The notes beneath the pieces were generated by a model. The model made no database searches. It saw only the letters and a program-made list of their open reading frames with translations, and was not told the origin of the DNA. Source: Macrostomum lignano (lineage: Eukaryota). Taken from it: a DNA stretch of 58,892 bases. Below, piece after piece: positions 34,995 through 58,892 of this stretch. Where the stretch lies: the NCBI GenBank assembly GCA_002269645.1, contig NIVC01004127.1, forward strand, positions 1-58,892. The letters are read 5' to 3'. The stretch's first letter is position 1. Every line of letters starts with the position of its first letter. The position numbers were made by a program, and so were the translations under genes.

Positions 34995-35044
<50 letters not shown>

Positions 35045-35138
35045 ATCTATCTATCTATCTGTCTATATATTTATGTATCTACCTATCTATCTATCTATCT
35101 GTCCATCTATCTATCTATCTATCTATCTATCTAATCTA

Positions 35139-35170
<32 letters not shown>

Positions 35171-35240
35171 GTCTATCTATCTATCTATCTACCTATCTAT
35201 CTATCTATCTGTCTATATATTTATCTATCTACCTATCTAT

Positions 35241-35308
<68 letters not shown>

Positions 35309-35400
35309 TTACCTATCTATCTACCTATCTATCTGTCTATATATTTATCTATCTACCTACCTATCTATCTATCTATCTATCTATCTATCTGTCTATCTAT

Positions 35401-35450
<50 letters not shown>

Positions 35451-35451
35451 G

Positions 35452-35496
<45 letters not shown>

Positions 35497-38469
35497 TTGT
35501 CTATCTATCTGTCTATCTATCTATCTTCAGTCGTCTCACCTTAGACAGTGTTATAAATCTCTTCGTATAGTCTGCAACAGCTCCGGCCACCCCGGCCCCA
35601 ACCAGTCCAGCACCAATCAGCACAGCGCCGCAGATGCCAGCAAACTGATCTGAGTAACCATACGGACACAGAATCTGCTCCAGCAGGGCTGACAATGCCG
35701 TGAACAGGCCCATTCCAGCGCCTACGGCTAGCAACAGTAATCCGAAAGCTCGATTAGTTAAACAGGCACGAATACTCGACCAGAATGTGAGATGCTGAGC
35801 AGCAGCAGATTGATGCAGCTCAGATCCAGCAACACCTGGCGCAGGCGCTTGTCTAGTAAAAATTGACGTAACAACAGAGAACAGCAAAGCAGCTGCCGCA
35901 GCCATAAAGTACACTAAACTGACTAACGGCAGGTCAGTTTTCGATTTCACTAGCAGAGGCGATAGGATATTAGTGAGCAGAATTCCCAATGGATTGGACA
36001 TGCTGCCCAGTGTGTTAGCAGTAGCCCGCTGGCTGACAGGAAATTCTGACGCAACAGCAGTTGGAGAAAACATGAAGAATGGCTGAGCTATGGCAGCTGT
36101 AATTTGGCCAGCCAATGCCAGAGAGAATGATGGTTGAGCTAGTATGGCGCTAGCGTACCGCATGGCGCCACCAGATGCACTGAAAATGGCGCCAATTAGA
36201 AGACCGGTGCGAACGCCAAGTCTGTGTTGTGGGGAAGATTATGGAGAGTTAGCTTCTGTTAATAGCAATTCCAGTGTCAGTCATAAAAATAATTTTCAAT
36301 AAAATGTACACAGGCATCAAATAGGAATTATTTGGATAGTTATGTGCTCAAGGGGATTTCTTACAGATAGTCATGAGCTCAAGGGGAATCATTTGGATAG
36401 TCATGTGCTCAAGGGGAATCATTTGGATAGTCATGTGCTCAAGTGGAATCATTTGGATAGTCATGTGCTCAAGGGGAATCATTTGGATAGTCATGTGCTC
36501 AAGGGGAATTATTTGGATAGTCATGTGCTCAAAGGGAATCATTTGGATAGTCATGTGCTCAAGGGGAATCATTTGGATAGTCATGTGCTCAAGTGGAATC
36601 ATTTGGATAGTCATGTGCTCAAGGGGAATTATTTGGATAGTCATGTGCTCAAAGGGAATCATTTGGATAGTCATGTGCTCAAGGGGAATCATTTGGATAG
36701 TCATGTGCTCAAGTGGAATCATTTGGATAGTCATGTGCTCAAGGGGAATCATTTGGATAGTCATGTGCTCAAGGGGAATTATTTGGATAGTCATGTGCTC
36801 AAGGGGATTTCTTACAGATAGTCATGTGCTCAAGGGGAATCATTTGGATAGTCATGTGCTCAAGTGGAATCATTTGGATAGTCATGTGCTCAAGGGGAAT
36901 CATTTGGATAGTCATGTGCTCAAGGGGAATCATTTGGAAAGTCATGTGCTCAAGGGGAATTATTTGGATAGTCATGTGCTCAAGGGGATTTCTTACAGAT
37001 AGTCATGTGCTCAAGGGGAATCATTTGGATAGTCATGTGATCAAGTGGAATCATTTGGATAGTCATGTGATCAAGGGGAATCATTTGGATAGTCATGTGC
37101 TCAAGTGGAATCATTTGGATAGTCATGTGCTCAAGGGGAATCATTTGGATAGTCATGTGCTCAAGTGGAATTATTTGGATAGTCATGTGCTCAAGTGGAA
37201 TTATTTGGATAGTCATGTGCTCAAGGGGAATTATTTGGATAGTCATGTGCTTAAGGGGAATCATTTGGATAGTCATGTGCTCAAGGGGAATTATTTGGAT
37301 AGTCATGTGCTCAAGTGGAATCATTTGGATAGTCATGTGCTCAAGGGGAATTATTTGGATAGTCATGTGCTCAAGGGGAATTATTTGGATAGTCATGTGC
37401 TCAAAGGGAATCATTTGGATAGTCATATGCTCAAAGGGAATCATTTGGATAGTCATGTGCTCAAGGGGAATCATTTGGATAGTCATGTGCTCTAGGGGAA
37501 TTATCGAGATGGTAGTGTTCTTGAGGGGAATTATCATGAAAGCAAATTGCTCCTCAAGCAGTGGTGTGATTGGAAAGTTTGCCCAATTTCGCGCCGACTG
37601 AAAATTTTCGCGCCATGCCAATGATATTCTACTGACAGCCAAATAAGTCAATTGATGACACTTTTGAGGATGCGTCTGGCTACCAATTAGCATGTCTCTC
37701 AAGTCCCAGCCGTGTCCCGCCTGAACTTCTTGTTGGCGATGTTGGGTGGAATCTTTGAATCTGGGCAAATGGCCATCAGATCCTCGGCAAGGTCCTCTTC
37801 TGACTCGAAGCTGCGATTCTTCAGTGCAATCCTGACAACACACACATCTGATCTCTGCCGCCCTTGCAGACGTAGCAGCCACATCTTCATTGTCACTTTG
37901 CTTCTTTGCGACCACGAAATTCTCCACGAATCTCGAAATTCTCGAGATTAATCTCCTAAGCTATGACATTCTTGTATTTCATACTGTCTGACAAGAGAAT
38001 AAGTGTAAAAAGCAGAAAATAAGAATGCAATTTTCGCGCCCATGGTTCCACAAAATTTCGCGCCAGACCCCCAGGATTCGCGCATTCGCGCCATTTTCGC
38101 GCCTGGCGCGAATTCGCGCCTGAATCACACCACTGTCCTCAAGGGTATTAGTCAAATAGACAATAAATAAATGATAAATTTTGTAAGTATTTACCTATCC
38201 AGACAATATGCAGTTGGCAAGCCAAAAACCAGTGAAGCAAGAGGATAGACAAGAGCCAGCCAGTTAACACCATTAGCAGTTACATTATAGAACAACTGAG
38301 TATAGTCAGCAATGGCTGAATAAGTTATCCATAGGGCAGCATTGGATACATTCAGCAAACCCAATGTTAACACTAAGAACCAGCGATTGAAAAGTGTTTT
38401 AATTGTAGCAGTATTGTTTGAGTCATTGCTGCTATGAACTAGATATACTGTTCCACTGTTGCTCTCCAT
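34381..38469 (-). CDS. SLC49A3: MFS transporter, SLC49A3/MFSD7 (FLVCR family); coding exons 38469-38195, 36221-35540, 34887-34381 (about 487 aa)
   Basis: RWFLVLTLGLLNVSNAALWITYSAIAD...NWLALVY, AQPFFMFSP...FPVSQRATANTLGSMSNPLGILLTNILSPLLVK, ALLEQILCPYGYS, LELGVEATHPVGEAVSTG. Splice phases (AG|A, then phase 0) give one open frame. Confidence 0.88.
34980..35525. repeat. (ATCT)n microsatellite in MFS intron 2
   Basis: Direct reading. The IYLS/YLSI ORFs are artefacts. Confidence 0.98.
36325..37535. repeat. 30-bp minisatellite (ATTTGGATAGTCATGTGCTCAAGGGGAATC) in MFS intron 1
   Basis: About 40 tandem copies. Confidence 0.97.
37559..38135. mobile_element. Non-autonomous hAT element (577 bp)
   Basis: TIR CAGTGGTGTGATT / AATCACACCACTG with a perfect 8-bp TSD TCCTCAAG (37551-37558 and 38136-38143). 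TTTTCGCGCC subterminal repeats. Confidence 0.93.
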
Positions 38470-42583: not shown

Positions 42584-43926
42584 TGAGGGTCATCCCAAAA
42601 GTTTCAGCAAACGCTTATTAATTTTCAACAAACGAGTGTCAGAACAATGAACATGTCAAAAACCTTCAAAATAACTTCGTTGACTTGAATTGTGCGCTCC
42701 CAGCGGCCAGGCAACTTTTAAACGCCATCAGCAGCGCCGGATTCGCACAGGTCTTTTGCAATGCGGCCGACCTCGCTGATCAGGTCATCCAGGCAATGGA
42801 AACAATGCCCTCAGAGCTGGTTCTTAAGCTTCGGAAAAAGGTCGAAATCGCAGGGACTGAGGTCTGGGGAGTAAGGAGGATGAGGCAGCACCTCCCACTG
42901 GTAGTCCCGCAGTAGGTCCTGCACAATGCGGGCTGTGTGCAAACTGGCATTGTTGTGCAGAAGAAGTGGACCAAGTTCCAGGGTTTGTGGCCGCTTTTTG
43001 CGCAAGGCAGGCCGAAGATGGTGAATAATGAAGCTCCAATAGTACTGTTGGTTGATGTTTTGGCCCTCAGGAACGCGGTGGATAAGAATAATGCCAAAGC
43101 TGTCGTAGCATGCGATGATCATCATCTTGTCGGCTCCCTTGGCGCGCCGCAGAACTGATGGTCTTGATGGCTAGGCAGAACCTTTCGACTGCCACTCGGA
43201 ATTCTGACTTTTGAGATTGGGCTCGTACGAACAGATCCAAGTCTCATCAAGCGTGACAATACGGTCTAGGAAAGCCAAACCCTCTCTCCTGAACCGATGC
43301 AGAAGCTGCTGAGCAGTTGTCACCTGGCGTGCCTTGTTGTCATCCGTGAGATGGTGCGGCACCCACCTGGCTGTGACCTTTTGCAGTCCAAGATCCTGGA
43401 TGAGGATCCGATGCACACTCGACGAGGGGATTCCGGACAGCTCAGCCATTTCTTCGCATATCCAACGGCGATTGATGTTCAGCAGCCCTTGGATCAACTC
43501 GATGTTCGACTCTGTGCGAGCTTCTTTTGGCCTTCCAGATCGTGGGTCATCCTCGACATCAGAGCGGCCATTCTTGAATCGACTGTACCAGTCGTACACG
43601 GCTCGCTGGCTCATCGCATTTGGCCCATGGGCCTGCAGCAACTGATGGTGAATTTGAGCTGCAGGGACACCACGAAGACATTCCATTTTAGTGTATGAGC
43701 GCTGCTCAAAGTTTGACGGAAATTCCATTTTATCATTGTCGGCCGATGTTTGATTTAGTATCTCACAAAATGTTCTTTATAAAACAGAATTTTGCAGCTA
43801 GAATGCTAAAAACTGACTCAGACACCCAAAATATGCTCATCTTTCGTGTGGTATAAGTGCTGTAGTCCTAAAAGTTGTCTATGGCACAAAATCATTCGAT
43901 TGCTGAAACTTTTGGGATGACCCTCG
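42584..43926 (-). mobile_element. Mariner transposon (irritans-like CGAGGG TIR), full length, inactivated
   Basis: 27-bp TIR (T/C)GAGGGTCATCCCAAAAGTTTCAGCAA with TA TSDs at 42582-42583 and 43927-43928. The transposase from 43728 has WVPHHL, DETW and YSPDLSPCDF motifs, in-frame stops at 43171-43173 and 42811-42813, and HDNA changed to HNNA. Confidence 0.95.
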
Positions 43927-45159: not shown

Positions 45160-47839
45160 AGCTAGAATAGTAGATTTTCGTAGCGATGTGCTGAGCAAAC
45201 CAACACCGGGTATGATGAAAGCAATGATTGAATCAGTTAGCTATGGAGACGATGTGTTTGGCGAGAATACCACTGTGATGGGTAAGTGTTTCTGGCATGT
45301 GTATTTATTAGTGCAAATCCTGTGCTTTTAAGCCACTTTTAGTTTTAGTGTCAGAAAAGACGTCATTTTAGTGTCAGAGATGCCCATTTTAGTGTCAGAG
45401 ATGCCACTTTTAGTGTCAGAGATGCCATTTTTAGTGTCAGAGATGTCACTTTTAGTGTCAGAGAAGAAGAAGACGCCACTTTTAATGTCAAAGATGCCAC
45501 TTTTAGTGTCAGAGACGCCAGTTTTAATGTTAGAGACCCTGATGTGTTCCTTATTACCAGTCCTCAACCGTAATCAAGGAACAATCACTTCTAGCTCAGT
45601 AGCTAGGCAACCCAGTATGTCAACAGAAGGTATTCAATTACCTTGAGTCCTTAACTGAGAGCTCTCGTCAATACTCCTTGTTCGTTGATCTCGCTATCAG
45701 TAGCGTCTGTCCTTCAGGAATTCCGGGCGCCGGTCAACAGTTGATCTGGTCCGCTCTTGCAGTTGTCTCCTTGACTTCTTGCCGGCCGGTAATCTGTAGT
45801 TCGGACCAATCGGAAGCCTACTCCTTCTAGTAGTGCCTCTATGCACTCTAGGTATGGCTCCGGAAACCACTGATAGTCCTCTAAGATCTATCAGGGGCAG
45901 TCCTTCTGGAGACTGCAACCAGTAGAGTCTAAACAGACTCAGGAGTCTCAACAGACTCACAATAAACTCAAGTCACTCTTGGACTTGAGCGAGACGTCTC
46001 TAACAACAACGGCGCAAATGAGTAAGGCTTACCGCAGGAACTCGACCACGTCTTCGAGTTGCTTCAGGAAGTCTGCTGCAGAGCTTCCTCTTCGGAGCTT
46101 TCTCTCTCGGAGATTCTTGGCTCCGGGTCCGTTCCGGACCACTTGTATTTATAGGCGTTCAGACCTCTCTCGAGGTCGTACATCACTGTCTTCGCAAATG
46201 TCAAAGGGTCACGATTCGGTGGCTGTCAAGCATGACAGGGTAGAAAGTTGCGCAACTAGTCTATTGTAAAAGCGCATGATTGGTTACCGTAGCTGGTAGA
46301 CTTTGATTGGTTCATCCGGGTGCAACCCGAGTGCAAACCAAATGATGACTTGAAGGTGGGGTTTGAATTGACAGTTGTTGGTCGCACGTGATTGGGTGAT
46401 TTCTAAAATTAGCATGCTCGAGGTCTCTCTCTTCCTATTGGTTAGTCCGAATATACTTATAGTTCAAAGCATACCTTATTCATGCTCTTCAATTTACTAC
46501 TAAATAAAATGTGTGAGTAGTACGTTAACACTTTTATGTCTTTTTTACGAAAGGTAGAACACTCTACAACCCCACTTTTAGTGCCAGAGACGCCACTTTT
46601 AGTGTCAGGGATGTCACTTTTAGTTCAGGGCCTCCACTGTTTTCGAAGCAACTTCAGCGCTTTTAGAAGATAAACTAATGTGCTTACATGTCTAATTTTA
46701 TTTCTAAAAAATGAACAGAACTGGAGTCGCGAGTCGCTAAAATGCTTGGCCAAGAAGCTGGACTATTTGTCACTAGCGGCACTATGGGCAACTTACTGCC
46801 CGTGATGTCGCACTGTAGGGAGCGAGGTTCAGAAGTTATCTTGGGCGATCTGTGTCATATTCATCTGTACGAACAGGTATTCTATTAACTATTTGAACTG
46901 ATTGAATAGCTGTATATAAAAATGTATTGATTTGATATTTTACTAGCCTGACAACAATCTTTGTCTTGCTCTAATCTCGAGTACTTTCCTCTTTGTCTAC
47001 TCTACTACTCTACTTCCATTGCTAAGGTCTTTGTTTTGCACTACTTTCGGTGCTAAGGTCTTTGTCTACTCCACTTCCATTGCTAAGTTCGTTATGTTGT
47101 ACTACTTCCAGTACTGAGGTCTTTGTCTACTTTACTTACATTGCTGTATTTTTCTTGCAGTACTTCCGGTGCTAAGGTCTTTGTTTTGCACTACTTTCGG
47201 TACTAAGGTCTTTGTTCACTCTACTTCCATTGGTGCCTATGTCTAGTATACTCCCGGGGCTAAGATCTTTGTGTTGCACTACTTTCAGTACTTGAAGTCT
47301 TAATCTTCCATTATTTAGGTCTTTGTTTTACTCTATTTTCGTTGCCAAAGTCTTTATTTTTGCCCTGCTTCCAGAATTGAGGCCCTTGTCTCGCTAACCT
47401 ACCTGTACTAAGGTCTTTGTCTCATTTGATTACCTGTATTAAAGTCTTGCATCGCTTAAGGACACTGCTTGAGGTCTTTGTCTCGAAACAATTTTGTCGT
47501 CTCCTCAGGTCTTTATAGAAGCTCAATGTTTTTATAACAAACAAATAAACATTTTCTCCATAGGGAAGTTTGGCCTCATTCGCCGGCGCGCACCACAGGG
47601 CGGTCAGCACCAATCCTGACGGCACCCTCTGCCTGGAGCAGTGCCGGCGCCTGATCCGCACCAATGCGGAGGACCCGCACTATCCAATCACCAGGGCGCT
47701 GTGCCTGGAGAACACGCACGGACTGGCCGGCGGCAAAGTGCTTCCCGTGGCTTACTTTGCCGAGGTGAGGGGATACGTATCGGTGTCTTTGTCTGTCTGT
47801 CTGTCTGTCTGTCTGTGTGTCTGTGTACTGTGGATCTTT

Positions 47840-47876
<37 letters not shown>

Positions 47877-47878
47877 TT

Positions 47879-47935
<57 letters not shown>

Positions 47936-50900
47936 GTGTCTGTCTGTGTGTGTATCTGTCTGTCTGTCTGTCTGTCTGTGTGTCTGTGTACTGTGTATCT
48001 TTGTGTCTGTCTGTGTGTGTGTGTCTTTCTGTCTGTCTGTGTGTCTGTCTGTCTGCCTGTCTTTCTGTTTGTCTGTCTCTGTTTGTCTGTCTCTGTTTGT
48101 CTGTCTCTGTCTGTCTGTCTGTCTGCCTGTCTTAGTGTCTGTCTGTCTGCCTGGCTGTCTGTCTGTCTGTCTGTCTTTCTGTAATTATCTCTCTGGGAGT
48201 CTGTCTGTAACAAAGTCTTAGTTTTCTGTCTTTCTGTAAGTTTTAGTCAATTTATCAATTTTATTGTCAATCCATACAAGACGAATACTGTACGCAGGCG
48301 AGCACTCATATACGCTCACACTGGGTGTACAGCGGTCCCACATTTGCATTTCAAATTGTCAGGCCTTGGTGGCTGGCCCTCATGGGTGTGAATGGCTGAA
48401 CAGCACATACAATAACAATTTTCGTGCACCACAAGCCCCAAATGATGTGGCCTCACACGGAGTGGAACCAGGGTAAGGGTCGTGGCGCGAGACGCGTTTA
48501 CCGCTAAACTGGCTCTTCCCTCCCCTAGCCAATGTTTGCCTGTCCGCCATCACTCCTATGCAATAAATTTCCCTATGCACTCCAACATTCGCAGGCCAGA
48601 GAGCTCTGCAACAGGTACGGCATGAAGCTGCACGTTGATGGAGCCAGACTGATCAATGCAGCCGTGGCTTTGGGTATCGACCCTATTGAGTATGGCAGAT
48701 ATGTCAGTTCAGTGACTATTTGCTTCTCAAAGGTGAGAATCTGAGGATCTAGTTCAGGGGTTGCAAGCTGTTTTCTTTTACCTCAAAGGCCAGATAAAGA
48801 ACCCAGCTCATAGCGTCGGGCTATGTAAGAGAGAATAGAGGATGAAAGAGGGGAGGAGAAGAGAGAGGGAAGAGAAGGGAAAAAGAGAGAAGATAGAAAA
48901 AGAGAGGAGAGAAGAGAGGAAAGAGGGGAGAGAAGAGAGGAGATAGAAGAGAGGAGAGAGAAGAGAGGAGAGAAGAGACAAAGAGGGAAGAGACGAGAAA
49001 GAAAAGAGGGGAGAGAGGAGAGGAGAGACAAAAGAGGGAAGAGAAGAGAGGAGAGGGGAGAGAAGAGAGGAGAGGAGAGAGAAAAAGAGGGAAGAGAAGA
49101 GAGGAGACGAGAGAGAATAAAGAGGGGAGAGAAGAGAGGAGAGGAGAGAGAGAGAAAAAGAGGGGAGAGAAGAGAGGAGAGGAGACAAAGAGGGAAGAGA
49201 AGAGACGAGACGAGAAAGAAAAGAGGGGCGAGAGGAGAGGAGAGACAAAAGAGAGAAGAGAAGAAAGGAGAGAGGAGAGAAGAGAGGAGAGAGGAGAGAA
49301 GAGAGGAGACGAGAGAGAAAAAAGATGAGAGAAGGGAGCTGAGAAGAGCCAAGCCTTGAGCGGGTCGGATTGCTATTGTGAAGTTTCAAAAGACCCAAGC
49401 GCCGAATAAAGAGGCTTCGCGGGTTTAAATTCGCCGCCCCCTGATCTCGTAGATGCAACTATGAATTCCTAGCAGTTTTTCTGCATGAATTCATTTCTCT
49501 GTTTTTTTCCAGGGTCTCGGCGCACCCGTCGGGTCCTGCATCGCATCGGATGCTGATACTATTAGTTAGTAAGTGCTGTCTATGTACTCTACGTGTACAC
49601 TGAATAACTCTCAGAATTGAAATTCCAAGCTGGCATTAGTCGGAAAAGTTCAAAATTGAATCCATCAAGGCTGAGTACGGAGTTGAAAATAACTTAGTAT
49701 TTTCTTGTTCTAAATTTTTGGCGCCTGTCAAAATAATTTCAGTTGCCGTCGAATTCGCAAAGCGCTCGGCGGCGCCGCCAGACAGCCTGGACTTTTGGCC
49801 GCTGCGGCCAGCTATTCGCTGGACGTAGCCAAGGACACCCTGTCAGCTGATCACGCCAATGCCCAGCTGATCTATTCAGGTTAGTTGGAAATTGTGCCAA
49901 TTTTTATTCACTTTTAGTTTAGTCAAAAAGAATTTTAAGGCAATTAAAAACGATAGTCATGTTGGTACAAAAGATGAGAGCCACATGATGCTACAATTTC
50001 TACAGATTTAAAAAATGCTACGAAGAGCTACAGAATTCCAAAAAGAGCTATTGGGTTCTACAAAGAGCTAGAGTGCTACAAAGAGCTACAAAATGTTACA
50101 AAGAGTTAAAGAGTGTTAGAAAGAGCTACAGTGTGCTACAAAGAGCTCAAGAGTGCTACAAAGAGCTACAGTGTGCTACAAAGAGCTACAGTGTGCTACA
50201 AAGAGCTACAGTGTGCTACAAAGAGCTACAGTGTGCTACAAAGAGCTACAGTGTGCTACAAAGAGCTACAGAGTGCAGAGTGCTACACAGAGCTACAGGG
50301 TGCCACACAGAGCTACAGAGTGCAAAGTGCTACACAGAGCTACAGGGTGCAGAGTGCTACACGGAGCTACAGAGTGCAGAGTGCTACACAGAACTACAGG
50401 GTGCAGAGTGCTACACGGAGCTACAGTGCAGAGTGCTACACGGAGCTACAGAGTGCAGAGTGCTACACGGAGCTACAGGGTGCTAAAAAGAGCTACAGAG
50501 TGATACAAAGAGCTACAGAGTGCTACAAAGATCCACAGGATACCACAAAGAAGTACAGAGTGCTACAAAGAGCTACAGAGTGCTGCAAAAAGCTACAGAA
50601 TGCTACAAAGAGCTACAGAAGGCTACACAGAGCTAAAGAATGCTACAAAGAGCTATAGAAGGCTACAAAGTGCTACAGAGTGACACAAAGAGCTATAGGA
50701 TGCTTCCAAACCTAGTTATATGTGTTATTGTGGTCAAAATACAATAAAGTTTTTCTCAATCTCATTCCGCACAGGTGTGTCGCAGGTCAACCTACCCGAC
50801 TGGCTGGTGTTTGAGAAGCCGCAGACCAATGTAATGCAAATTAAACTTACTAAGGATGCTCCAATAAGTATCGACCAACTGCAGACTATTATTGAAGAGG

Positions 50901-51594
50901 TAAGCCAGTCTTAAAAAGCTTTGATCTCTTAATCGGTAGACTGTTTAAACAGATATGTTTAATTATTAATTAGTTTCTTTTCAGTAGTCCTTGATGATCT
51001 CTAGTTTACTGTATAGGCATTATTGCACTGCAGTCTGGAGAGTAATTGGGTTGACCTTTTTTGTCTCCTCATAACCTACACACACGCCTGTTGTATGTCG
51101 AAATAGTTAACTCGTTTATTATATTATATTAGTTACTATCTTAATTAGTTTGTTTCAAAGATCGTTATGTTAATATTCTACCCCAAATCACTTTCTTAAT
51201 TCTAAAATTTACATATTCCAGGGCTTCTATATTGATGATAAGAATAATATATATACTCCTACGAGGGCTGCATGGGGCTTCATCATACACACGCTCACAC
51301 AGGGTTGTACAACGGCCTTTTTCCTAATCCCCATCAGACATGTACATCCGGGTGTGAATTCCACAAGCACGAAATCCAGCACCAACCACCAGCTCCGGAA
51401 CTAATAATTCACATCGAATCCTGTTTCATTTTCTCCAGCCAACCGACTCCTGCAAGATTCGTTTACGAGCTCCCGCCGTCTCTGAGACCATCATTAGATT
51501 GCTCACTCACAACGATCTGACCCGTCAGGACTGCCTGTTGGCCGTTGAGAAGCTGAAATACGCCTTGCAGAATGTTGTGGATCTTCAAAAATGA
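45160..51594 (+). CDS. tha1: Low-specificity L-threonine aldolase (PLP-dependent); exons ~45160-45281, 46719-46876, 47564-47764, 48595-48732, 49513-49568, 49743-49879, 50775-50899, 51439-51594; start codon not resolved
   Basis: [14 protein letters not shown]...[42 protein letters not shown]|GLGAPVGS (PLP lysine) and [12 protein letters not shown]. All GT-AG junctions are phase-compatible. Confidence 0.93.
45335..45540. repeat. 21-bp minisatellite (TTTTAGTGTCAGAGATGCCAC), resuming at about 46570-46625
   Basis: The tandem copies are interrupted by about 1 kb of unrelated sequence. Confidence 0.85.
47000..47430. repeat. Degenerate repeat of about 31 bp (CTACTTTCGGTGCTAAGGTCTTTGT...)
   Basis: Recurrent CTAAGGTCTTTGT cores in aldolase intron 2. 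Confidence 0.65.
47780..48200. repeat. (TGTC)n/(TG)n microsatellite in aldolase intron 3
   Basis: Direct reading. Confidence 0.95.
48290..48515 (-). mobile_element. Probable tRNA-derived SINE; its 3' part recurs at about 20205-20260 and 51290-51330
   Basis: Minus-strand head GAGCCAGTTTAGCGGTAAACGC...GGTTCCACTCC is A/B-box-like. The motif CTCACAC[A/T]GG..TGTACA[G/A]CGG is present at three places in the window. Confidence 0.5.
48755..49443 (+). mobile_element. Non-autonomous hAT-like element with an AG-only interior (same family as 28591)
   Basis: Ends CAGGGGTTGCAAG and TTCGCCGCCCCCTG. Flanks ATCTAGTT / ATCTCGTA form a degenerate 8-bp TSD. The 3' 90 bp aligns with 29105-29193. Confidence 0.8.
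50015..50700. repeat. About 20-bp minisatellite (GCTACAAAGAGCTACAGTGT) in aldolase intron 6
   Basis: Tandem copies with longer sub-variants. Confidence 0.9.
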
Positions 51595-52458
51595 ATCTGA
51601 CTGTCCATTATTAATTAAAGATTAATCTGCTACAAAGAGCTACAGAATTCTACAAAGTGTTACAGAGTTCTGTAAAGGGCTAAAGTGTTCTACAAAAAAA
51701 CTGCATGGTGCTAAAAACAGTTACAACCAGCTTTGTAGCTCTTTACATTGAAAAACATGCCTTGCAGAATATTGTTGAGATAATTTTTTAAAGATTTGAT
51801 TATTTTAATTAAAAAATAGTTAACTTTCTCTCATTAACACACATCCGGTGCTTTCATTTTTTGTGAATTTTTCAATAATATTTTACAGATATTCGTAAAT
51901 ATAGTTTATATGTACAACAACTAATTGATTGCTTAGGTGACTGTCACTGATTGCAATATTGAAATATTTTTTTCGAGGATTTTTTAGCGTAAAGTGCTAA
52001 GCCGTGCTTAATACCACGTTTTAGCATCTATAATGTTTTCATTATTTTTCAAAGATTACTATGCTGTGCAAATTGCTATATCTTATTGCGCCCCATTGTA
52101 TGCTTGAATTAATTGATAGAATTTTTCTAATTATATTTTCTGTTCAAAAAATACAATGAAAGAAATTTTATCTCGACGTATTGCTCTTTGTGTTTTTGAT
52201 AAATTTATTTAATTTTTATTATAGCAAACAAGGTCTACTCTTGTGGATGATAGAATTGCCTCAGCGCTAGCGCTGTATTTGCAATACATCTGTCATTATG
52301 ATAAATAGTTTAGATCATTATATCATATACCACCAGTTATATTAATATCATAGTCATAAATCTTACCAAACTACCGGTACAAAACTTTATGCTCTTCAAG
52401 CAAATTATCTGCAAATAATTAAAAATTGTTCTAAAAAATCGACTAGTAAACACCCGAG

Positions 52459-52528
52459 ATGTCTGCTTTAACTCCTCGAATGTCGGGAGCAATCGTCTGC
52501 CTCCTAGTGCTTATCGTCGGTGTACCAG
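52459..52528 (+). CDS. Constant first coding exon (signal peptide) of the MAM-like variable-exon gene
   Basis: ATG at 52459 reads MSALTPRMSGAIVCLLVLIVGVP, with a hydrophobic h-region and a canonical CAG|GTAAGT donor in phase 1. Confidence 0.8.
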
Positions 52529-52604
52529 GTAAGTGCAACGCTTTCGTTGCTTATTAAAATTACCCAATCAAAATATGAAAGACTTTAAATAAAGTATTCA
52601 ATAT

Positions 52605-52626
52605 TTGGCAAGGCTCGTTGCTCCAT
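52605..52626 (+). promoter_or_regulatory. Putative splicing docking site (TTGGCAAGGCTCGTTGCTCCAT)
   Basis: It is the reverse complement of a motif found upstream of all 12 downstream paralogous exons. The sequence match is seen directly; the function is inferred. Confidence 0.8.
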
Positions 52627-52954
52627 TCTCTATATAGTTGAAAAATTGGCTAATATGATAAAATAATTTTTTTCGAATGAGTTGCCTGAGTAGTTTAAAA
52701 ATATTGTCTTTAAATTTTTTTGAATGGGGCTAAGATGCGCATTTTTTCACGAATTTGTGATTCATTGTAACAAAACAAAATATGATAATTAATTATCTAA
52801 TTAATTTGCTTGAATTTATATTTAAAATCAGTAGCTTTAAGTTATTATAATGCGATTAGGAGTTAACGAGATTCTTTCATATCATACGCTCGTACATGAT
52901 CAATGTGTTTGCAAAAATTGTTGCTCTAGCGTGCATCGATTGCGCCTACTCTAG

Positions 52955-53339
52955 GGGTGCAAAATTCACTGGCTGTTTTTGACGATTCGGTGTCAGTTTC
53001 GTGCGACTTTGAACAGCAACATTCTGCTGCTAGTAGAAGTTCGTCAAAAACTGATTCTCAGTTCTGCAACTGGGTAGATTTAGCCTGGAAACCGGGCAGT
53101 GCTTGGCAGATTCGCTATCTGACAGAGTTCAACACTCAGGCTGTCTGTCTGCACGGCGGCTCAGCCAGACTGCAGAGTCCCTGGTGGATTGATTCTGCTA
53201 GTAGCAATTTCAGGCGTCAGAGTGCTCAGTGCTTGTCGTTTGCTTATCACGTAACTCCTAACAATCAATTAGGAGATTCATCGAAGTCTTCTATCGAAAC
53301 TGACTTACCTCAACTGGCTTTATTGAAGAATACTCACGG
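52955..53339 (+). CDS. Variable exon V1, N-terminal part of a MAM-like domain
   Basis: CTAG|GG acceptor. SCDFEQ...FCNWVD...WQIRY...ARLQSPW...QCLSFAYH...LALLKNTHG|GTAAGT. 385 nt (3n+1). Confidence 0.85.
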
Positions 53340-53653
53340 GTAAGTTTAGGTTTTTATTAACTCAAGGGAAAAACGTCTCTTGCCAACAGCACAAACTCGT
53401 GCATCTTTCTAACGATAGAAATCACTTAGTCAATTGACCTTTTTTCTCGGAAAGCATCCCTGACGACATGCATTGTTAAAACATAACATTACCACCTCTA
53501 ACAGGACTTGTGGCTTAGTTTTTTTAGTGATATCGCAATTAGTCCTTGTATAAGTTTATGGAGCAGCGAGTCTGCTCCGAGATTTCCTACATAAAGTCTA
53601 CTGCTTATAATTATTAATATGCTTTATGCAGTGTTGGAGGCAGTTGCAGTCAG

Positions 53654-54021
53654 TACTGGAGCTAGTGTAATGGAAGAAAGTCCCTATCAACGGATCGCTG
53701 GTCAAGCGACGGTTATAATCGGGAATTAGAATGGCGTCGATTTGCTATTCATAGCAGTCTGAACGCTGGTTCTCCTGCCTCGTCAGTTAACGTTAGAACC
53801 GGATCTGCAATTACGAATAGTTGGTGCACAGCTGGATTGATTCCTTCACCGTCGGTTGCTGTGTCTGGTCGGTTGTTAAGCGACTGGGTGCGCAGCGGCC
53901 GCGATAGCAGCAATGGACTCTGCTTGTCGTTTAGTTATCGTATCGACTATGGACCAGAACGACGGAAAAGCGATGTTGACGATACCGCCGCAGTGTTGGC
54001 TCTTCTAAGGCGATCGTCGGG
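53654..54021 (+). CDS. Variable exon V2 (5' boundary uncertain; in-frame TAG at 53663 suggests an indel or pseudo-exon)
   Basis: C...RWSSDGYNRELEWR...SGRLLSDWV...LCLSFSYRID...LALLRRSSG|GTTAGA. Confidence 0.6.
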
Positions 54022-54161
54022 GTTAGAAAAATGCTTTGATTTATGTTCTGTTTTTTGCATTTGCTTAGCAACGAGCCTTAGCTTAATTGATTGTGTTCGT
54101 ACTTAGCTTGGCTGGTAACTTGAGAAAATTATTTATAATTACCAACGCTTCGATTGCGCAG

Positions 54162-54525
54162 CGAGTTCACTTTCGTCGTCTGGTAGTGCTAACCGAATGG
54201 TTATTAAACAGCTCACCTGCAGTGGTAGCGGTTTCGGCAGTAGTTCTCAATCTTGTAATTGGTTCAACGATATCGGCTATAATACTGAGGCGCATTGGAA
54301 GTTGGCTAGCATTGCCGATTCGGATGGTAGCGCTGCCACCGCTGCCACTTATCGAACCAGTTATTGCGCAGTTGTCACTGGCGGTGCTACTAGCGCACAG
54401 CTTGTATCGGCTAGATTTGTTAGCCTATTCATTGCTAGCAGTTCGGTCAGCGAAGGCTGCATGCAGTTCTCTTACCAGCTAGTTGATCGGCAGAGTCAAT
54501 TGCAATTGTTGAAGCGCAATTCCGG
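54162..54525 (+). CDS. Variable exon V3, MAM-like N-terminal part
   Basis: GCAG|CG acceptor. KQLTC...CNWFNDIGYNTEAHWKLA...ARFVSLF...CMQFSY...LLKRNSG|GTATGA. 364 nt (3n+1). Confidence 0.85.
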
Positions 54526-54675
54526 GTATGAGAATTGAAAAACACTATTATAGCTATATAACTAGTCATTATTAATGTCCTGTTGCAACGAGCCTTGTAG
54601 AAAATTAGTCAGAATTGGGAGTTTAGCAGTTACACGATTTTACAGTGATTGATTGCTGCTTTCACTGTATTTCAG

Positions 54676-55018
54676 CCTTTGGTTTATCAAACAGCAGATT
54701 TAGTGGCTTTGACATTAAAGCTTTGCAATGTCAAAGCAATGGCGCTGATACATGTCTATGGAGCGATGACAATGGCTACAATACAAAAGCGCACTGGAAG
54801 CTGGCTGCTGTGCAGTCTTCGCCAGACTCTCCGTTACACCGATCAGCTTTCTGCATGGTTCCAATAAATCCTAGCGTCACGGCTGCGACCTCAATTTCGG
54901 CTAGATTTGTCAGCTTATTTCTCTCCGAACCGATTGAGTCCGCCTGCTTGCAGTTTGTGTATCAGTTGGTACCTGCAGCCTCAGCTCCATCGCTCCAGTT
55001 GCTTAAACGTCACTCTGG
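54676..55018 (+). CDS. Variable exon V4, MAM-like N-terminal part
   Basis: TCAG|CC acceptor. ALQC...CLWSDDNGYNTKAHWKLA...ARFVSLF...CLQFVY...LLKRHSG|GTAAAT. 343 nt (3n+1). Confidence 0.85.
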
Positions 55019-55135
55019 GTAAATTGCACAGGATTCCCCTTTAATTTTTTTTCGAATAGGATGGAGCAACGAAACCTTGATTGACCAAAACTCTGTTGAT
55101 AATTTAGTAAAATAATGGCTTGAAAAATAATCTAG

Positions 55136-55445
55136 TTACCGGTCTATCTGATGAAGCTGTAAAACAATTGCACTGCGATAGTGGATCCCGCTGCTATTGG
55201 CTAGATGACAGTTACAATACTGACGCCCACTGGCAGTTGGCTACTGTTACTGAGAGTTCTCGCTTTCAAACGCACTATTGCCTAATTAGAGATGTGTCGG
55301 CGCTTAAACGTGTAACTAAGGCTCGTTTTGTTAGCCGCTTTGTTACTGACAGCAAAGTGGGCTGTTTGCACTTTCGCTATCTGATCAGTCAGCAGGATGA
55401 TGAGTTAAGTGGTGCGGATCTGCACCTGCTTCGACGGAATCGAGG
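55136..55445 (+). CDS. Variable exon V5, MAM-like N-terminal part
   Basis: CTAG|TT acceptor. KQLHC...CYWLDDSYNTDAHWQLA...ARFVSRF...CLHFRY...LLRRNRG|GTATGG. 310 nt (3n+1). Confidence 0.85.
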
Positions 55446-55614
55446 GTATGGCGCTGGTTTCTTTTGTACTCTTAGTTATGATGCTGCATGATTACTTACT
55501 GTTATTTTAAACTTGTTCAAACAAACACGAGCAACGAGCCTTGACTAGCTTGCAGTTTCTTTATAAACTGATAATTATATAGTCCAGGTTATACATTAGA
55601 TGGCTCTCTTGCAG

Positions 55615-55900
55615 CAACTAAAATAGATCTGCAGTGCACAGCTCGAGGTCACTGTGCCTGGCTCAACGACGTTTTCAATCGTCTGCACTGGACCTTGGCA
55701 GACGTTGGTGCAGTTGCTGGTGGTAACACTGGCCTGTGTCTTGTACCTCAGTCGGTGTCGTCATCTTCTGTTGGTAGCGATGCAGGCGGTCAATTTGTCA
55801 GTCCGACGGTATTTTCTAAAGTTAGCGGTCAGATGTGTCTTCAGTTTGTCTACTGGACTGCTGGTCGAGCTAAATTGAATCTATTAAAGCGCAGTTTAGG
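55615..55900 (+). CDS. Variable exon V6, MAM-like N-terminal part (alternative same-phase acceptors give starts at 55588 or 55600)
   Basis: DLQC...CAWLNDVFNRLHWTLA...GQFVSPTV...MCLQFVYW...LLKRSLG|GTATGA. 286 nt (3n+1). Confidence 0.8.
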
Positions 55901-56042
55901 GTATGATTTATCATTTTAGCGATGCTTGAACCGTCAAGATATATTTAGTTAATTTGATTTGATGCAACGAGCCTTGTCTAAAGTTTCTGTTTATAATAGA
56001 TCTTTAACGACTACATTGACTCTTTCGGAAAATCAATTTTAG

Positions 56043-56397
56043 CCGGTACATTAGCTGCAGTGTCAGTACCCGAGTTAACGTGCATAAGTACGTCAGCTAG
56101 CCCTTGCACTTGGCGCGACGATCAAGATAATATTGACGCTCATTGGCGCGCCTCCTTGTATCCGTCGGCTGCATTTCAGTCACCGCGATGTCTAGTGCCG
56201 GAGCCAAGCGTTTTGTCGGGTTCTAGCTACTCTAGCTCACGACCCTTAACCGTAGCTCGGTTTGTTAGCCAATGGCTTACTGGCAGACGTGGTGATATGT
56301 GTCTTCAGTTTGCCTATCGAATTGATCAACCGATGGCTACTCGTAAAGAGACAACTGTTGCTGGTGCTGGATTAAGCTTGCTGAAACGGAGCAGAGG
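56043..56397 (+). CDS. Variable exon V7, MAM-like N-terminal part
   Basis: TTAG|CC acceptor. PELTC...CTWRDDQDNIDAHW...ARFVSQW...MCLQFAY...LLKRSRG|GTATGA. 355 nt (3n+1). Confidence 0.85.
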
Positions 56398-56555
56398 GTA
56401 TGAGTTGGCTATAAAAATAATGCAAAAAACGTGAAATAACTGGAGTAACGAGCTTTTGTCATAAAATTTCAGTTAGTGTCCTTGGAATTTTGGCTTAAAT
56501 ATTGTAAGAGATGCATGTCTAATTATTTAACTGCTAGACTGTTTTTCCACCTCAG

Positions 56556-56874
56556 CGACGCTTGAACAGTTGTCCTGCCACGCTGGCGGTCACTGCAGTT
56601 GGCGTGATGATTTCGACAATAAAGGCGCCCACTGGGTGTCCGCCCTGGATGCTGCAAGCGACGCGTCCTCGTTAGGCAGCGGCAGATCGCACCTGTGCTT
56701 GGTTCAGAGCGGACCTCAGCCGCACAGTTTAGTGACTGGTCGCTTTGAGAGTCACTGGATTGCTGCCACTAAATCTGATAATGAGCAGCAGTTGTCGCCA
56801 TCTGTTTGCCTCACGTTCAGCTACTTGACGGCGCCGCGGGAGGTGTCGCTGAGTTTGCTCAAGCGAAACTGGGG
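56556..56874 (+). CDS. Variable exon V8, MAM-like N-terminal part
   Basis: TCAG|CG acceptor. EQLSC...CSWRDDFDNKGAHW...GRFESHW...VCLTFSY...LLKRNWG|GTAAAA. 319 nt (3n+1). Confidence 0.85.
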
Positions 56875-56987
56875 GTAAAAGAAATTGAGTTTAAATTTTG
56901 TTTACTTTGTGAGCAATGAGCTTTGCCATTAGTTATTGCTTGTATTTTAAAATTGTTTTTGTGACGCTTGCCTGAACATGAATTCAG

Positions 56988-57345
56988 CTTCTAAAATGGC
57001 TGACGAACGTCTTGCTTGTTCTTCGAGCACTTCGGCAATCTGTGCTTGGCGAAACGATCTTGACAACAAAGACGGCGCTTGGAAAATGACGCTGGAGCCG
57101 CCTGGCTTTAGCCGCGCAGCACTCTCGTCTTACTGTTTGGTTCCTATCAGGCGTCCAATGTCATCTGGCAGGAGTTCTGTCAGTCTAGTTGCTGAATTTC
57201 ATAGCGCTTGGGTGTCTGGAGGGACGACAGGATCAGACCCTAGTGCTGGTCAATTGTGTCTTCAGTTTGCATTTAGAGTGAAGGATTCGTTCCATTCTTC
57301 TAGTGCCAGCGCGGCAAAACTGGTTCTGCTAAAACGCGTCTCTGG
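56988..57345 (+). CDS. Variable exon V9, MAM-like N-terminal part
   Basis: TCAG|CT acceptor. ERLAC...CAWRNDLDNKDGAW...AEFHSAW...LCLQFAF...LLKRVSG|GTAGGA. 358 nt (3n+1). Confidence 0.85.
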
Positions 57346-57471
57346 GTAGGAGTTTTTGCATCATGTTTATTCCCGCTTCTTTAGGCGAGCCTTGCCAAGT
57401 TTATTGAATTTGATAGCACACCTGTGGTAGCTGAAATTGTAACCGTTTTTTATGTCTTTTTTTCAAATAAG

Positions 57472-57814
57472 TTACCCACTGCGTTTCGGTTGACTGCTCC
57501 TCAAAATTGCCAAATGTTTGCACATGGAGCGACGGTCAATTCAATCGAGCTGCCAACTGGAAGGTCGCAATTGACTCCAATAGTCGCTGTGCTTCCTATT
57601 GCCTCGTTCCAAATAAGATTAGGTCTCAAGCGATGACGTCATCACGTAGCTCTTCGGCACAGGCTTACACTGGAAGCTTTCTTAGTGGCTGGATTGTCGC
57701 TGAAGAGTCAAGACAGAATCCAATGTGTCTGCAATTCAATTACAAGTTTGTTCTAGCAGAGCCAGTAATATCCAAGCCTGGATTGCAACTGGCTTTGTTA
57801 AAGCGTACATTTGG
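57472..57814 (+). CDS. Variable exon V10, MAM-like N-terminal part
   Basis: TAAG|TT acceptor. SVDCSSKLPNVCTWSDGQFNRAANWK...GSFLSGW...MCLQFNYKF...LLKRTFG|GTATGT. 343 nt (3n+1). Confidence 0.82.
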
Positions 57815-57936
57815 GTATGTTTTTGGATTAAATTGGAGCAACGAGTCTTATTAATCAATTTTTAGCTTGATAAAAAATGCATCAAGTTTAATTAGTATAT
57901 GTAAAGCATCTAGAACTCGTAAATGCCCTCTTATAG

Positions 57937-58255
57937 CCGTCTCAATTGATTGCTCATCGACCTCGCCTACTTTTTGCACTTGGAGCGATTCACCTTTTAA
58001 TCGGGCAGCCAATTGGAAGGCCGCAATCGATCCCAGCGTTCGTAGCGGTGGTAGAAGCGCGTCCTATTGCTTGATTCCAAATAGACCAGTAGCTACAGAA
58101 GACACTACTCACAGCGGTAGCTTTCTTAGTAATTGGATAACCAAAACGAAAGAATCCGGTTCGCCAGAGCAGCAGATGTGTGTTCAGTTTGCGTACAAGT
58201 TTATTGGTTCGCCAATGACTAGAATGCATCTGGCTCTGTTAAAGCGTTCATATGG
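57937..58255 (+). CDS. Variable exon V11, MAM-like N-terminal part
   Basis: ATAG|CC acceptor. SIDCSSTSPTFCTWSDSPFNRAANWK...GSFLSNW...MCVQFAYKF...LLKRSYG|GTAAGG. 319 nt (3n+1). Confidence 0.85.
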
Positions 58256-58385
58256 GTAAGGTCTAAAACCTGTCAGGTAAAAGTGAGCTTTTTACAGTAG
58301 AGTTTCTTTGAGCAACGAGTCCTTGTGTATGCTGCTTTTTCATTTTTGCTATAGGTACGTTTGTACTTGTTTTATTGCGTTATAG

Positions 58386-58715
58386 TGACATGTCTTGCCT
58401 CTTCGATTAATTGCTCGTCCAATTCGCCTATGCTCTGCTCGTGGAGCGATTATCCATTCAATCGAGCCGCTAATTGGAAGGCAACAATCGATTCTAATAG
58501 TCGTTCGTCCTCTTATTGTTTAATTCCTAATGCGGCTTTGGTGATGCCTATTAATGCAGCGTCTGAACAAGGATTTGCGGCCAGCTTTATTAGCGGTTGG
58601 ATCGCTGGAAAAAACCAACGCTCGATGTGCTTGCAGTTTGCGTATAAATTTTAGTGTCATCTCAATTGCCTGAACGTAGGCAGTCTTCTCTGGCATTATT
58701 GAAACGTTCATTTGG
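58386..58715 (+). CDS. Variable exon V12, MAM-like N-terminal part (one T missing in the run at about 58649-58652)
   Basis: ATAG|TG acceptor. SINCSSNSPMLCSWSDYPFNRAANWK...MCLQFAYKF, then a frame shift to ...LALLKRSFG|GTATGC. Adding one T gives 331 nt (3n+1). Confidence 0.78.
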
Positions 58716-58892
58716 GTATGCTTTTATTTCAACTGATGCGATAAAAAAATGAGTACAAAAAGGTTCTGCTGCCCCCATAGATTAAAAAATTTCGTCAGGA
58801 GCGATGCATTGAAAAGCCTTAAAATGCGTCGTATGTTTGGTCATGAAGCTTTACTCCGGGCCTCTGTGAGACTGTATATTCGGTGCAACAAA

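What the first reader, a model, noticed from the sequence alone, without database searches (positions are those of the whole stretch)
52955..58715. The variable exons are phase 1 to phase 2 (3n+1), so tandem inclusion frameshifts
Measured lengths are 385, 364, 343, 310, 286, 355, 319, 358, 343 and 319 nt, plus 331 for V12 after a 1-bp repair. All are 3n+1. Each starts in phase 1, matching the signal exon, and ends at an invariant GG|GT. Domain-repeat proteins built by exon duplication normally use symmetric exons. Here joining two modules breaks the frame, which supports mutual exclusion independently of the RNA pairing and suggests NMD as a back-up proofreader.
Basis: seen in the sequence. 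Interest (0 to 1): 0.78.

Follow-up and report, generated by a model that had tools for sequence, protein, structure and literature searches.

The report
Frame-locked alternative exons, flatworm MAM receptor
The twelve tandem exons are alternative versions of the first 58% of one MAM adhesion domain in a Macrostomum lignano membrane protein; all are 3n+1 long, so only one-at-a-time inclusion gives a protein, which is a common property of such exon arrays, though the gene itself appears undescribed.

Summary
In the window, V1 and V3-V11 have exactly the stated lengths, are all 3n+1, and are open only in the phase-1 frame. All 12 exons end GG|GT. That contig carries two more V exons, so 14 of 14 are 3n+1.

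An RNA-seq-derived GenBank CDS reproduces the phases: signal 0→1, V1 1→2, next exon 2→0. Every V-V pair gives a stop 4-55 nt past the junction. Skipping V or including four V exons also gives stops.

The interpretation needs trimming. V exons are not domain modules. They encode Pfam MAM positions 1-92 of 158, and the whole domain (V+W+C1, 633 nt) is an ordinary phase 1-1 module. About 60% of human mutually exclusive clusters are also not divisible by three. Off-frame stops are not enriched beyond codon composition. NMD is plausible but untested.

The larger result is an apparently undescribed gene with two clusters (14 V × 16 W), each with docking and selector RNA sites. Its exon phases are conserved in a trematode.

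The parts
52459..52528 (+). Signal-peptide exon, coding part (MSALTPRMSGAIVCLLVLIVGVP + 1 base). It is 70 nt and ends in phase 1.
   Evidence: It matches exon 1 of the GenBank CDS BOX15_Mlig029915g2 (P0016).
52607..52624 (+). Docking site GGCAAGGCTCGTTGCTCC, 79 nt downstream of the signal-exon donor.
   Evidence: It is the only minus-sense exact copy of the 12-mer GCAACGAGCCTT in the window.
52955..53339 (+). V1, 385 nt, phase 1→2. No selector lies upstream. This is the V exon used in the GenBank transcript model.
53560..53578 (+). Selector for V2, GGAGCAGCGAGTCTGCTCC. Its differences from the perfect complement keep G·U pairs.
   Evidence: Duplex energy is -37.8 against -23.0±3.7 for shuffles.
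53632..54021 (+). V2. It is 390 nt with a broken frame in the window, and 391 nt and intact in GenBank (one extra G after 53678). It lacks the first Cys pair.
54066..54082 (+). Selector for V3.
54162..54525 (+). V3, 364 nt, phase 1→2.
54583..54599 (+). Selector for V4.
54676..55018 (+). V4, 343 nt, phase 1→2.
55063..55080 (+). Selector for V5.
55136..55445 (+). V5, 310 nt, phase 1→2.
55528..55545 (+). Selector for V6.
55615..55900 (+). V6, 286 nt, phase 1→2.
55961..55978 (+). Selector for V7.
56043..56397 (+). V7, 355 nt, phase 1→2.
56442..56459 (+). Selector for V8.
56556..56874 (+). V8, 319 nt, phase 1→2.
56910..56927 (+). Selector for V9.
56988..57345 (+). V9, 358 nt, phase 1→2.
57381..57396 (+). 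Selector for V10.
57472..57814 (+). V10, 343 nt, phase 1→2.
57835..57852 (+). Selector for V11.
57937..58255 (+). V11, 319 nt, phase 1→2.
58309..58326 (+). Selector for V12.
58386..58715 (+). V12. It is 330 nt with an in-frame TAG in the window, and 331 nt and intact in GenBank (one more T after 58652).

Best explanation
Window 52459-58892 is the 5' part of a Macrostomum lignano gene annotated in GenBank as hypothetical protein BOX15_Mlig029915g2. It encodes a type I membrane protein whose ectodomain is a single MAM domain.

**Gene layout**
- The domain is split over three exon positions.
- A cluster of 14 alternative V exons encodes MAM positions about 1-92. Twelve of these lie in the window.
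- A second cluster of at least 16 alternative W exons lies beyond the window.
- One constant exon, C1, completes the domain.
- The intron phases are 1 | V | 2 | W | 0 | C1 | 1. Every V and every W is 3n+1, while the domain as a whole is a normal phase 1-1 module.

**Shown by computation**
- Exactly one V plus one W gives a full-length ORF.
- Skipping, double or quadruple inclusion gives an early stop.

**Inferred**
- The choice of one V is made at the RNA level. One docking site after the signal exon competes for pairing with a selector upstream of each of V2-V14, as in the Dscam exon 6 cluster.
- V1 has no selector and is probably the default exon.
- The frame rule is an inherited consequence of where the introns sit inside the domain. 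It is conserved in a trematode.
- The rule makes any splicing error unproductive, and such products are probably cleared by NMD.
For: **Exon lengths and frames**
- Lengths, single open frame and GG|GT donors.
- The GenBank CDS is rebuilt base for base with these phases.
- That annotation derives from RNA-seq transcript assembly (PMC5730564).

**In-silico splicing**

| Product | Result |
|---|---|
| one V + one W | 210 of 210 fully open |
| V skipped | 15 of 15 with a premature stop |
| W skipped | 14 of 14 with a premature stop |
| two V | 196 of 196 with a premature stop |
| two W | 225 of 225 with a premature stop |
| four V (random sets) | 0 of 2000 open |

- In the window-only test, stops lie 4-55 nt into the second V and at least 279 nt upstream of the next junction.

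**Protein identity**
- V peptides share 24-45% identity, with invariant Cys, Trp and LL residues.
- They match Pfam MAM positions 1-92. The whole protein passes the MAM gathering score, 32.3 against 26.4.

**RNA pairing**
- The exact 12-mer occurs four times on the plus strand in V introns and once inverted at the docking site. About 0.007 exact matches are expected by chance.
- Duplex energies for V2-V14 are -30 to -39 kcal/mol, against about -18 to -25 for shuffled introns.
- Substitutions in the selector core are mostly C→U or A→G, which keep wobble pairs.

**Conservation**
- Paragonimus heterotremus has at least 15 V-like exons, and all that were scored end GG|GT.
- The best-polypyrimidine acceptor gives 3n+1 in 11 of 12 of them.
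- Its W-like exons end D[FY]K|GT, and their best acceptors give 3n+1 in 7 of 7.
Against: - Only one transcript isoform (V1 + one W) is on record. Use of V2-V14 rests on intact ORFs, frame-preserving indels and selectors, not on reads.
- NMD has not been shown in Macrostomum.
- Off-frame stop density equals the codon-shuffle expectation, so there is no sign that the frame was selected for proofreading.
- V2 and V12 are broken in this window's assembly.
- No shared selector motif was found in the Paragonimus introns, so the RNA-pairing part may be lineage-specific.
Confidence: 0.78

Rival explanations
1. The 3n+1 length is an adaptation. On this reading it was selected so that NMD proofreads mutual exclusion.
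For: - Both clusters are 3n+1.
- Every wrong combination gives a premature stop far upstream of later junctions.
- The phases are conserved from Macrostomum to Paragonimus.
- NMD-enforced exclusivity is documented for FGFR2 IIIb/IIIc (cited in PMC6071210).
Against: - The phases simply reflect where two introns cut an otherwise phase 1-1 domain.
- About 60% of human mutually exclusive clusters are not divisible by three, so this class is the default.
- Stops in the phase-2 frame are not enriched over codon-shuffle nulls, P = 0.27 and 0.71.
- Conservation of intron phase is expected without any selection for NMD.
Confidence: 0.2
2. The exons are co-included in tandem through other acceptor sites, giving a multi-MAM protein. 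This is how most database gene models of flatworms draw it.
For: - UniProt and GenBank models string several V-like segments together. Examples are P0001 in M. lignano, and P0003, P0006, P0007, P0010, P0017 and P0096 in trematodes and cestodes.
Against: - P0001 stays in frame only by using internal AGs. These trim V3 to 303 nt and V11 to 141 nt, deleting 21 and 60 residues and so the first conserved Cys or Cys pair.
- Seven of 14 V exons have no AG that could make a 3n exon while keeping the first Cys.
- Each V is only 58% of a MAM domain, and the missing part is encoded once, downstream.
- The RNA-seq-based model contains exactly one V.
- Many of these database models stop exactly at the GG|GT donor.
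Confidence: 0.03
3. Only V1 is functional, and V2-V14 are decaying duplicate pseudo-exons.
For: - Only the V1 isoform is on record.
- V2 and V12 are frame-broken in the window.
Against: - In the Illumina-polished GenBank assembly all 14 exons are open in exactly one frame.
- Their lengths run from 286 to 391 nt and differ only by multiples of three.
- Framework Cys, Trp and LL residues are invariant despite 24-45% identity.
- Thirteen selectors are retained.
- The transcript assembler kept only dominant isoforms, with isoform-frac 0.75.
- The two breaks in the window are single-base gaps (a missing G in V2, a missing T in a T-run in V12), of the kind left by long-read assembly.
Confidence: 0.05

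Closest known systems
Drosophila/arthropod Dscam1 exon 6 cluster (Graveley 2005 docking site-selector model)
   Same: - Tandem homologous alternative exons each encode part of one extracellular domain.
- A single docking site sits in the intron after the upstream constant exon.
- A complementary selector lies upstream of each variable exon, so only one pairing can form at a time.
- From my own memory and not checked here, Dscam exon 6 variants are also not multiples of three.
   Different: - The protein domain is MAM, not immunoglobulin.
- The phylum is Platyhelminthes, not Arthropoda.
- There are 14 V and 16 W exons rather than 48.
- One domain is cut into three pieces, two of them variable.
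- The first exon of each cluster lacks a selector.
- There are no functional data.
NMD-backed mutually exclusive exons (FGFR2 IIIb/IIIc; about 60% of human MXE clusters, Hatje et al. 2017, PMC5740500)
   Same: - Exon lengths are not divisible by three, so joint inclusion shifts the frame and creates a premature stop upstream of later junctions.
   Different: - The known cases are mostly two-exon clusters, with NMD dependence measured for FGFR2.
- Here NMD is untested.
- The objection that larger clusters can recombine to a multiple of three (PMC6071210) does not apply, because the second exon already contains stops.
MAM-domain adhesion receptors (RPTP mu/kappa, meprin, neuropilin, MAMDC/MALRD proteins)
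   Same: - The ectodomain matches Pfam MAM above the gathering score.
- The domain as a whole is a phase 1-1 module preceded by a phase-1 signal exon.
   Different: - The protein is a single MAM domain plus a transmembrane helix and a proline-rich tail, with no other domain.
- No known MAM gene has its domain diversified by alternative exon clusters, to the extent of the literature searches.

Membership tests
Mutually exclusive exon cluster from tandem exon duplication | Neighbouring exons are homologous. | tested here: met
   Alignment A1 shows 24-45% identity and 11 invariant columns.
Mutually exclusive exon cluster from tandem exon duplication | All exons share the same reading-frame class and splice-site phases. 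| tested here: met
   Ten of 12 in the window and 14 of 14 in GenBank are 3n+1, phase 1→2, with GG|GT donors.
Mutually exclusive exon cluster from tandem exon duplication | One and only one exon is present in mature mRNA. | tested here: inconclusive
   One RNA-seq-derived CDS has exactly one V and one W. No reads or isoforms for the other exons could be reached.
Docking site/selector competing RNA structures (Dscam exon 6 type) | A single docking site lies in the intron upstream of the cluster. | tested here: met
   It is at 52607-52624 and is the only inverted copy in the window.
Docking site/selector competing RNA structures (Dscam exon 6 type) | A selector complementary to the same docking core lies upstream of each variable exon. 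| tested here: met
   Thirteen of 14 exons have one, 34-93 nt from the end of the predicted duplex to the acceptor. Energies are -30 to -39, against shuffles of about -18 to -25. V1 has none.
Docking site/selector competing RNA structures (Dscam exon 6 type) | Pairing is required for exon choice, shown by disruptive and compensatory mutations. | not testable with these tools
   This needs minigenes or transgenic worms.
NMD-enforced mutual exclusion | Joint inclusion creates a premature stop more than 50-55 nt upstream of a later exon junction. | tested here: met
   All 100 V-V pairs do so in the window test, with the stop at least 279 nt before the next junction. All 196 pairs among the 14 exons also give a premature stop inside the second V.
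NMD-enforced mutual exclusion | Double-inclusion transcripts are made and rise when NMD is blocked. | not testable with these tools
   No read data were available. SMG-1 and the exon junction complex are described in planarians but not studied in Macrostomum.
MAM domain (Pfam PF00629) | The whole-protein score exceeds the gathering threshold. | tested here: met
   P0016 scores 32.3 bits against 26.4. V peptides alone score 11-23 bits over profile positions 1-94, below the threshold, as expected for a part-domain.
Dscam / immunoglobulin superfamily | Ig and FnIII domains are present. | tested here: not met
   Pfam finds MAM in the ectodomain and no Ig or FnIII domain. The gene resembles Dscam in mechanism but is not a member.

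The most novel reading that the evidence does not exclude
Flatworms, from Macrostomum to trematodes, cestodes and a monogenean, carry an undescribed counterpart of Dscam. It is a single-MAM-domain transmembrane receptor. Two successive mutually exclusive exon clusters give 14 × 16 = 224 ectodomain isoforms in M. lignano. Each cluster has its own upstream docking site and inter-exon selectors. The frames are locked so that only one V plus one W can be translated. MAM domains mediate homophilic binding in RPTP mu, so the isoforms could provide cell-surface identity for self-recognition or immune recognition.
Probability: 0.3. Interest if true: 0.88.

Novelty: new member of a known kind. Interest (0 to 1): 0.55.

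Why it matters
The frame rule itself is textbook logic for mutually exclusive exons and should not be counted as a surprise. It still has three uses.

1. **It settles how the locus must be read.** The productive mRNA has one V and one W. This exposes a large docking/selector-type alternative-exon system outside arthropods, and in a MAM rather than an Ig domain.

2. **It explains an annotation problem.** Automatic gene models of this locus are chimeric or truncated in M. lignano, Schistosoma, Paragonimus, Spirometra, Dibothriocephalus and Protopolystoma. Predictors cannot join the exons in frame.

3. **It offers a test system.** M. lignano is a transgenic, RNAi-amenable laboratory flatworm. The gene would allow competing-RNA-structure exon choice, and any role of NMD in it, to be tested in a second, independent lineage.

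Tried and rejected
- **Selection for hidden stops.** Synonymous-codon and codon-order shuffles give the same number of phase-2 stops as observed. Only the position of the first stop is marginally early (P = 0.04-0.09). I rejected this as evidence of design.
- **Symmetric exons through other acceptors.** Rejected.
- **Spliced-leader trans-splicing onto each V acceptor.** From memory, the M. lignano leader ends in ATG. That would read the exons in phase 0, which has 1-8 stops per exon, and would give no signal peptide. Rejected.
- **Other isoforms in protein databases.** Two word-indexed searches returned only P0001 and P0016. A Schistosoma query returned one more chimeric model. P0001 is not on record in the contig index.
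- **A shared selector motif in Paragonimus V introns.** No k-mer is shared by more than 5 of 12 flanks. This is inconclusive.
- **AlphaFold model of P0016 with a 10-row alignment.** Mean pLDDT was 55, too poor for a fold search or for placing exon borders with confidence, so it was not used. A PDB sequence search found nothing relevant.
- **Literature.** Searches for this gene or any flatworm MAM exon array found no paper.


Full report
**1. What the region is**

The window is Macrostomum lignano DNA.
- A concatenated V-exon query found a UniProt M. lignano model, P0001.
- A profile of ten V peptides (alignment A1) was searched against 1.84 billion representatives. It found P0016, GenBank hypothetical protein BOX15_Mlig029915g2, 422 aa.
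- The contig encoding P0016 was fetched as L001 (GCA_002269645.1, NIVC01000034.1).
- From window 52401 to the end, the window and L001 differ only by three single-base gaps in the window. Further upstream identity falls to 80-95%, so the window is another assembly or copy of the same locus.

**2. The observation**

| Exon | V1 | V3 | V4 | V5 | V6 | V7 | V8 | V9 | V10 | V11 |
|---|---|---|---|---|---|---|---|---|---|---|
| nt | 385 | 364 | 343 | 310 | 286 | 355 | 319 | 358 | 343 | 319 |

- All ten are 3n+1. Each is open only when read from phase 1, and has 6-15 stops in phase 2.
- The signal exon's coding part (52459-52528) is 70 nt and ends in phase 1.
- All donors read GG|GT after a conserved LL(K/R)xx motif.
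- V12 is 330 nt with a TAG in the window, and 331 nt and open in L001.
- L001 adds V13 (349 nt) and V14 (346 nt) beyond the window end. That makes 14 of 14.
- The GenBank assembly was Pilon-polished with Illumina and RNA-seq reads (PMC5730564). The two breaks in the window look like long-read indel errors or allelic lesions.

**3. Phases confirmed by a transcript-derived CDS**

P0016 is reproduced base for base by five exons:

| Exon | Length (nt) | Phase |
|---|---|---|
| signal | 70 | 0→1 |
| V1 | 385 | 1→2 |
| W | 160 | 2→0 |
| C1 | 88 | 0→1 |
| C2 | 566 | 1→end |

- The annotation came from genome-guided RNA-seq assembly with an isoform-fraction filter of 0.75. That filter explains why only one isoform is deposited.
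- The invariant GG at each V end is completed to a Gly codon by the first base of the next exon.

**4.

- In the window, 100 of 100 V-V joins give a stop 4-55 nt after the junction. Each stop lies at least 279 nt before the next donor. No triple inclusion is open.
- With all exons from L001:

| Product | Result |
|---|---|
| one V + one W | 210 of 210 fully open |
| V skipped | 15 of 15 with a premature stop |
| W skipped | 14 of 14 with a premature stop |
| two V | 196 of 196 with a premature stop |
| two W | 225 of 225 with a premature stop |
| four V (random sets) | 0 of 2000 open |

- Ivanov and Pervouchine noted that large clusters can sum to a multiple of three (PMC6071210). That does not rescue any product here, because the second exon is already read out of frame.

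**5. Why the frame rule is not remarkable in itself**

- A V exon is not a module. V peptides align to Pfam MAM positions 1-92 of 158. W plus C1 supply the rest, and the whole protein passes the MAM threshold.
- V+W+C1 is 633 nt and runs from phase 1 to phase 1. This is the classical symmetric module.
- The 3n+1 lengths follow from two introns, in phases 2 and 0, that cut the domain internally.
- In human, 60% of mutually exclusive clusters and 75% of the annotated ones are not divisible by three (PMC5740500).
- There are 97 stops in the phase-2 frame, against 92±7 and 101±7.5 under two codon-shuffle nulls. They are a by-product of T-rich third codon positions.
- What the equal residue class does show is constraint. 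Lengths range from 286 to 391 nt yet differ only by multiples of three. Each exon keeps one open frame and the Cys/Trp framework at 24-45% identity. All of them therefore behave as interchangeable coding exons.

**6.

- Symmetric exons would need phase-2 acceptors. Seven of 14 exons have no such AG before the first conserved Cys.
- The older UniProt model P0001 strings V2, V3 and V11 together. It does so only by using internal AGs that cut V3 to 303 nt and V11 to 141 nt, removing 21 and 60 residues.
- This is the practical consequence of the frame rule. Predictors produce chimeras, or models that end exactly at a GG|GT donor. The same happens in Paragonimus, Schistosoma, Heterobilharzia, Spirometra, Dibothriocephalus and Protopolystoma.

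**7. How the choice is probably made**

- The 12-mer GCAACGAGCCTT occurs exactly four times on the plus strand, always in V introns. It occurs once inverted at 52610-52621, 82 nt after the signal-exon donor. About 0.007 exact hits are expected by chance.
- RNA duplex energies between the docking region and the intron before each of V2-V14 are -30 to -39 kcal/mol. Shuffled introns give about -18 to -25. The intron before V1 scores no better than its own shuffles.
- The end of the predicted selector duplex lies 34-93 nt upstream of the acceptor.
- Core substitutions are mainly C→U and A→G, which keep G·U pairs.
- This is the geometry of the Dscam exon 6 cluster.
- It is inferred from sequence only.

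**8. Beyond the window**

- L001 holds a second cluster of at least 16 intact W exons, 148-205 nt and all 3n+1, phase 2→0. They all end D-F-K|GT.
- This cluster has its own docking-like element at L001 17705-17745.
- Complementary elements lie in most inter-W introns. Eleven of 15 score -28 to -44 kcal/mol, against about -20 for shuffles.
- The potential repertoire is 14 × 16 = 224 ectodomains.

**9. Conservation**

- In Paragonimus heterotremus (L002 and L003), V-like exons end GG|GT. The strongest acceptor gives 3n+1 in 11 of 12.
- Its W-like exons end D[FY]K|GT, with 3n+1 in 7 of 7.
- The phase layout therefore predates the split between Macrostomum and trematodes.
- No shared selector motif was seen in the Paragonimus introns.

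**10. NMD**

- The premature stops satisfy the distance rule for junction-dependent decay.
- SMG-1 and the exon junction complex exist in planarians.
- Nothing was or could be measured here.
- I rate NMD clearance of mis-spliced products as plausible, about even odds. I rate selection of the frame for that purpose as unlikely.

**11. Verdict**

- The inference that only single inclusion is productive is proven in silico and matches one real transcript.
- The implied unusualness is not supported.
- The valuable result is the gene. It is an apparently undescribed, flatworm-wide, two-cluster alternative-exon system that diversifies one MAM domain. No paper on it was found.

Noticed in passing
L001 17705-25153 (beyond the window's 3' end; window 58892 is about L001 16437): A second mutually exclusive cluster has at least 16 intact W exons, 148-205 nt, all 3n+1, phase 2→0, all ending DFK|GT. 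It has its own docking-like site, GGCAGCGGGGAAGACTTCAAGG, at L001 about 17712. Complementary CTTGAAGTCTTCCC..CTGCC elements lie in the inter-W introns. The docking site contains GACTTCAAGGTA, which mimics a W exon's 3' end plus donor, so the selectors could also mask W donors locally.
   Followed up: partly
window 53678/53679, 58652/58653, 58883/58884: The window lacks one base at each of three places relative to GenBank contig NIVC01000034.1: a G in V2, a T in a T-run in V12, and a G in a G-run in the last intron. The first two break V2 and V12 only in this assembly.
   Followed up: yes
window 52529-52954 and 53340-53631: V1 has no selector and is the exon in the only deposited transcript. 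The intron before V2 has two selector-like sites, 53367-53384 and 53560-53578. V2 also lacks the first conserved Cys pair of the other V exons.
   Followed up: partly
window about 45300-51600 (+); L001 2862-9136: The upstream neighbour is a Beta_elim_lyase (threonine aldolase-like) gene. UniProt model P0001 wrongly fuses it to the signal exon and to pieces of V2, V3 and V11.
   Followed up: partly
L002 and L003 (Paragonimus heterotremus LUCH01001724.1); proteins P0003-P0096: Homologous half-MAM exon arrays occur in trematodes, cestodes and a monogenean. They are annotated as chimeric multi-V proteins, or as fragments that stop at the GG|GT donor. In Paragonimus three separate gene models cover what looks like one locus.
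   Followed up: partly
window 8140-13791, 17459-18900, 24271-25282, 32720-33635, 36324-37501 and others: Satellite content is very high. There is a 21-nt unit in about 271 copies (5.6 kb), a 15-nt unit in about 100 copies, and several 28-81-nt arrays. These create most of the long spurious ORFs in the window.
   Followed up: no
window 43171-43728 (-), 2414-3760 (-): There are two transposon remnants. One is a Mos1/mariner-type HTH_48 plus HTH_32 ORF. The other is a 448-aa ORF with a weak DUF4371 (hAT-associated) match.
   Followed up: no
window 34381-36163 (-): Exons of a major facilitator superfamily transporter (MFS_1, E = 4.6e-10) lie on the opposite strand, interrupted by an (ATCT)n array.
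   Followed up: no
L001 25441-26006 (P0016 residues 236-422): The constant part encodes a transmembrane helix and a proline-rich cytoplasmic tail. The tail has a PPPRY (PPxY-type) motif and a PPPHPP motif, which hints at WW or SH3 adaptor binding.
   Followed up: no
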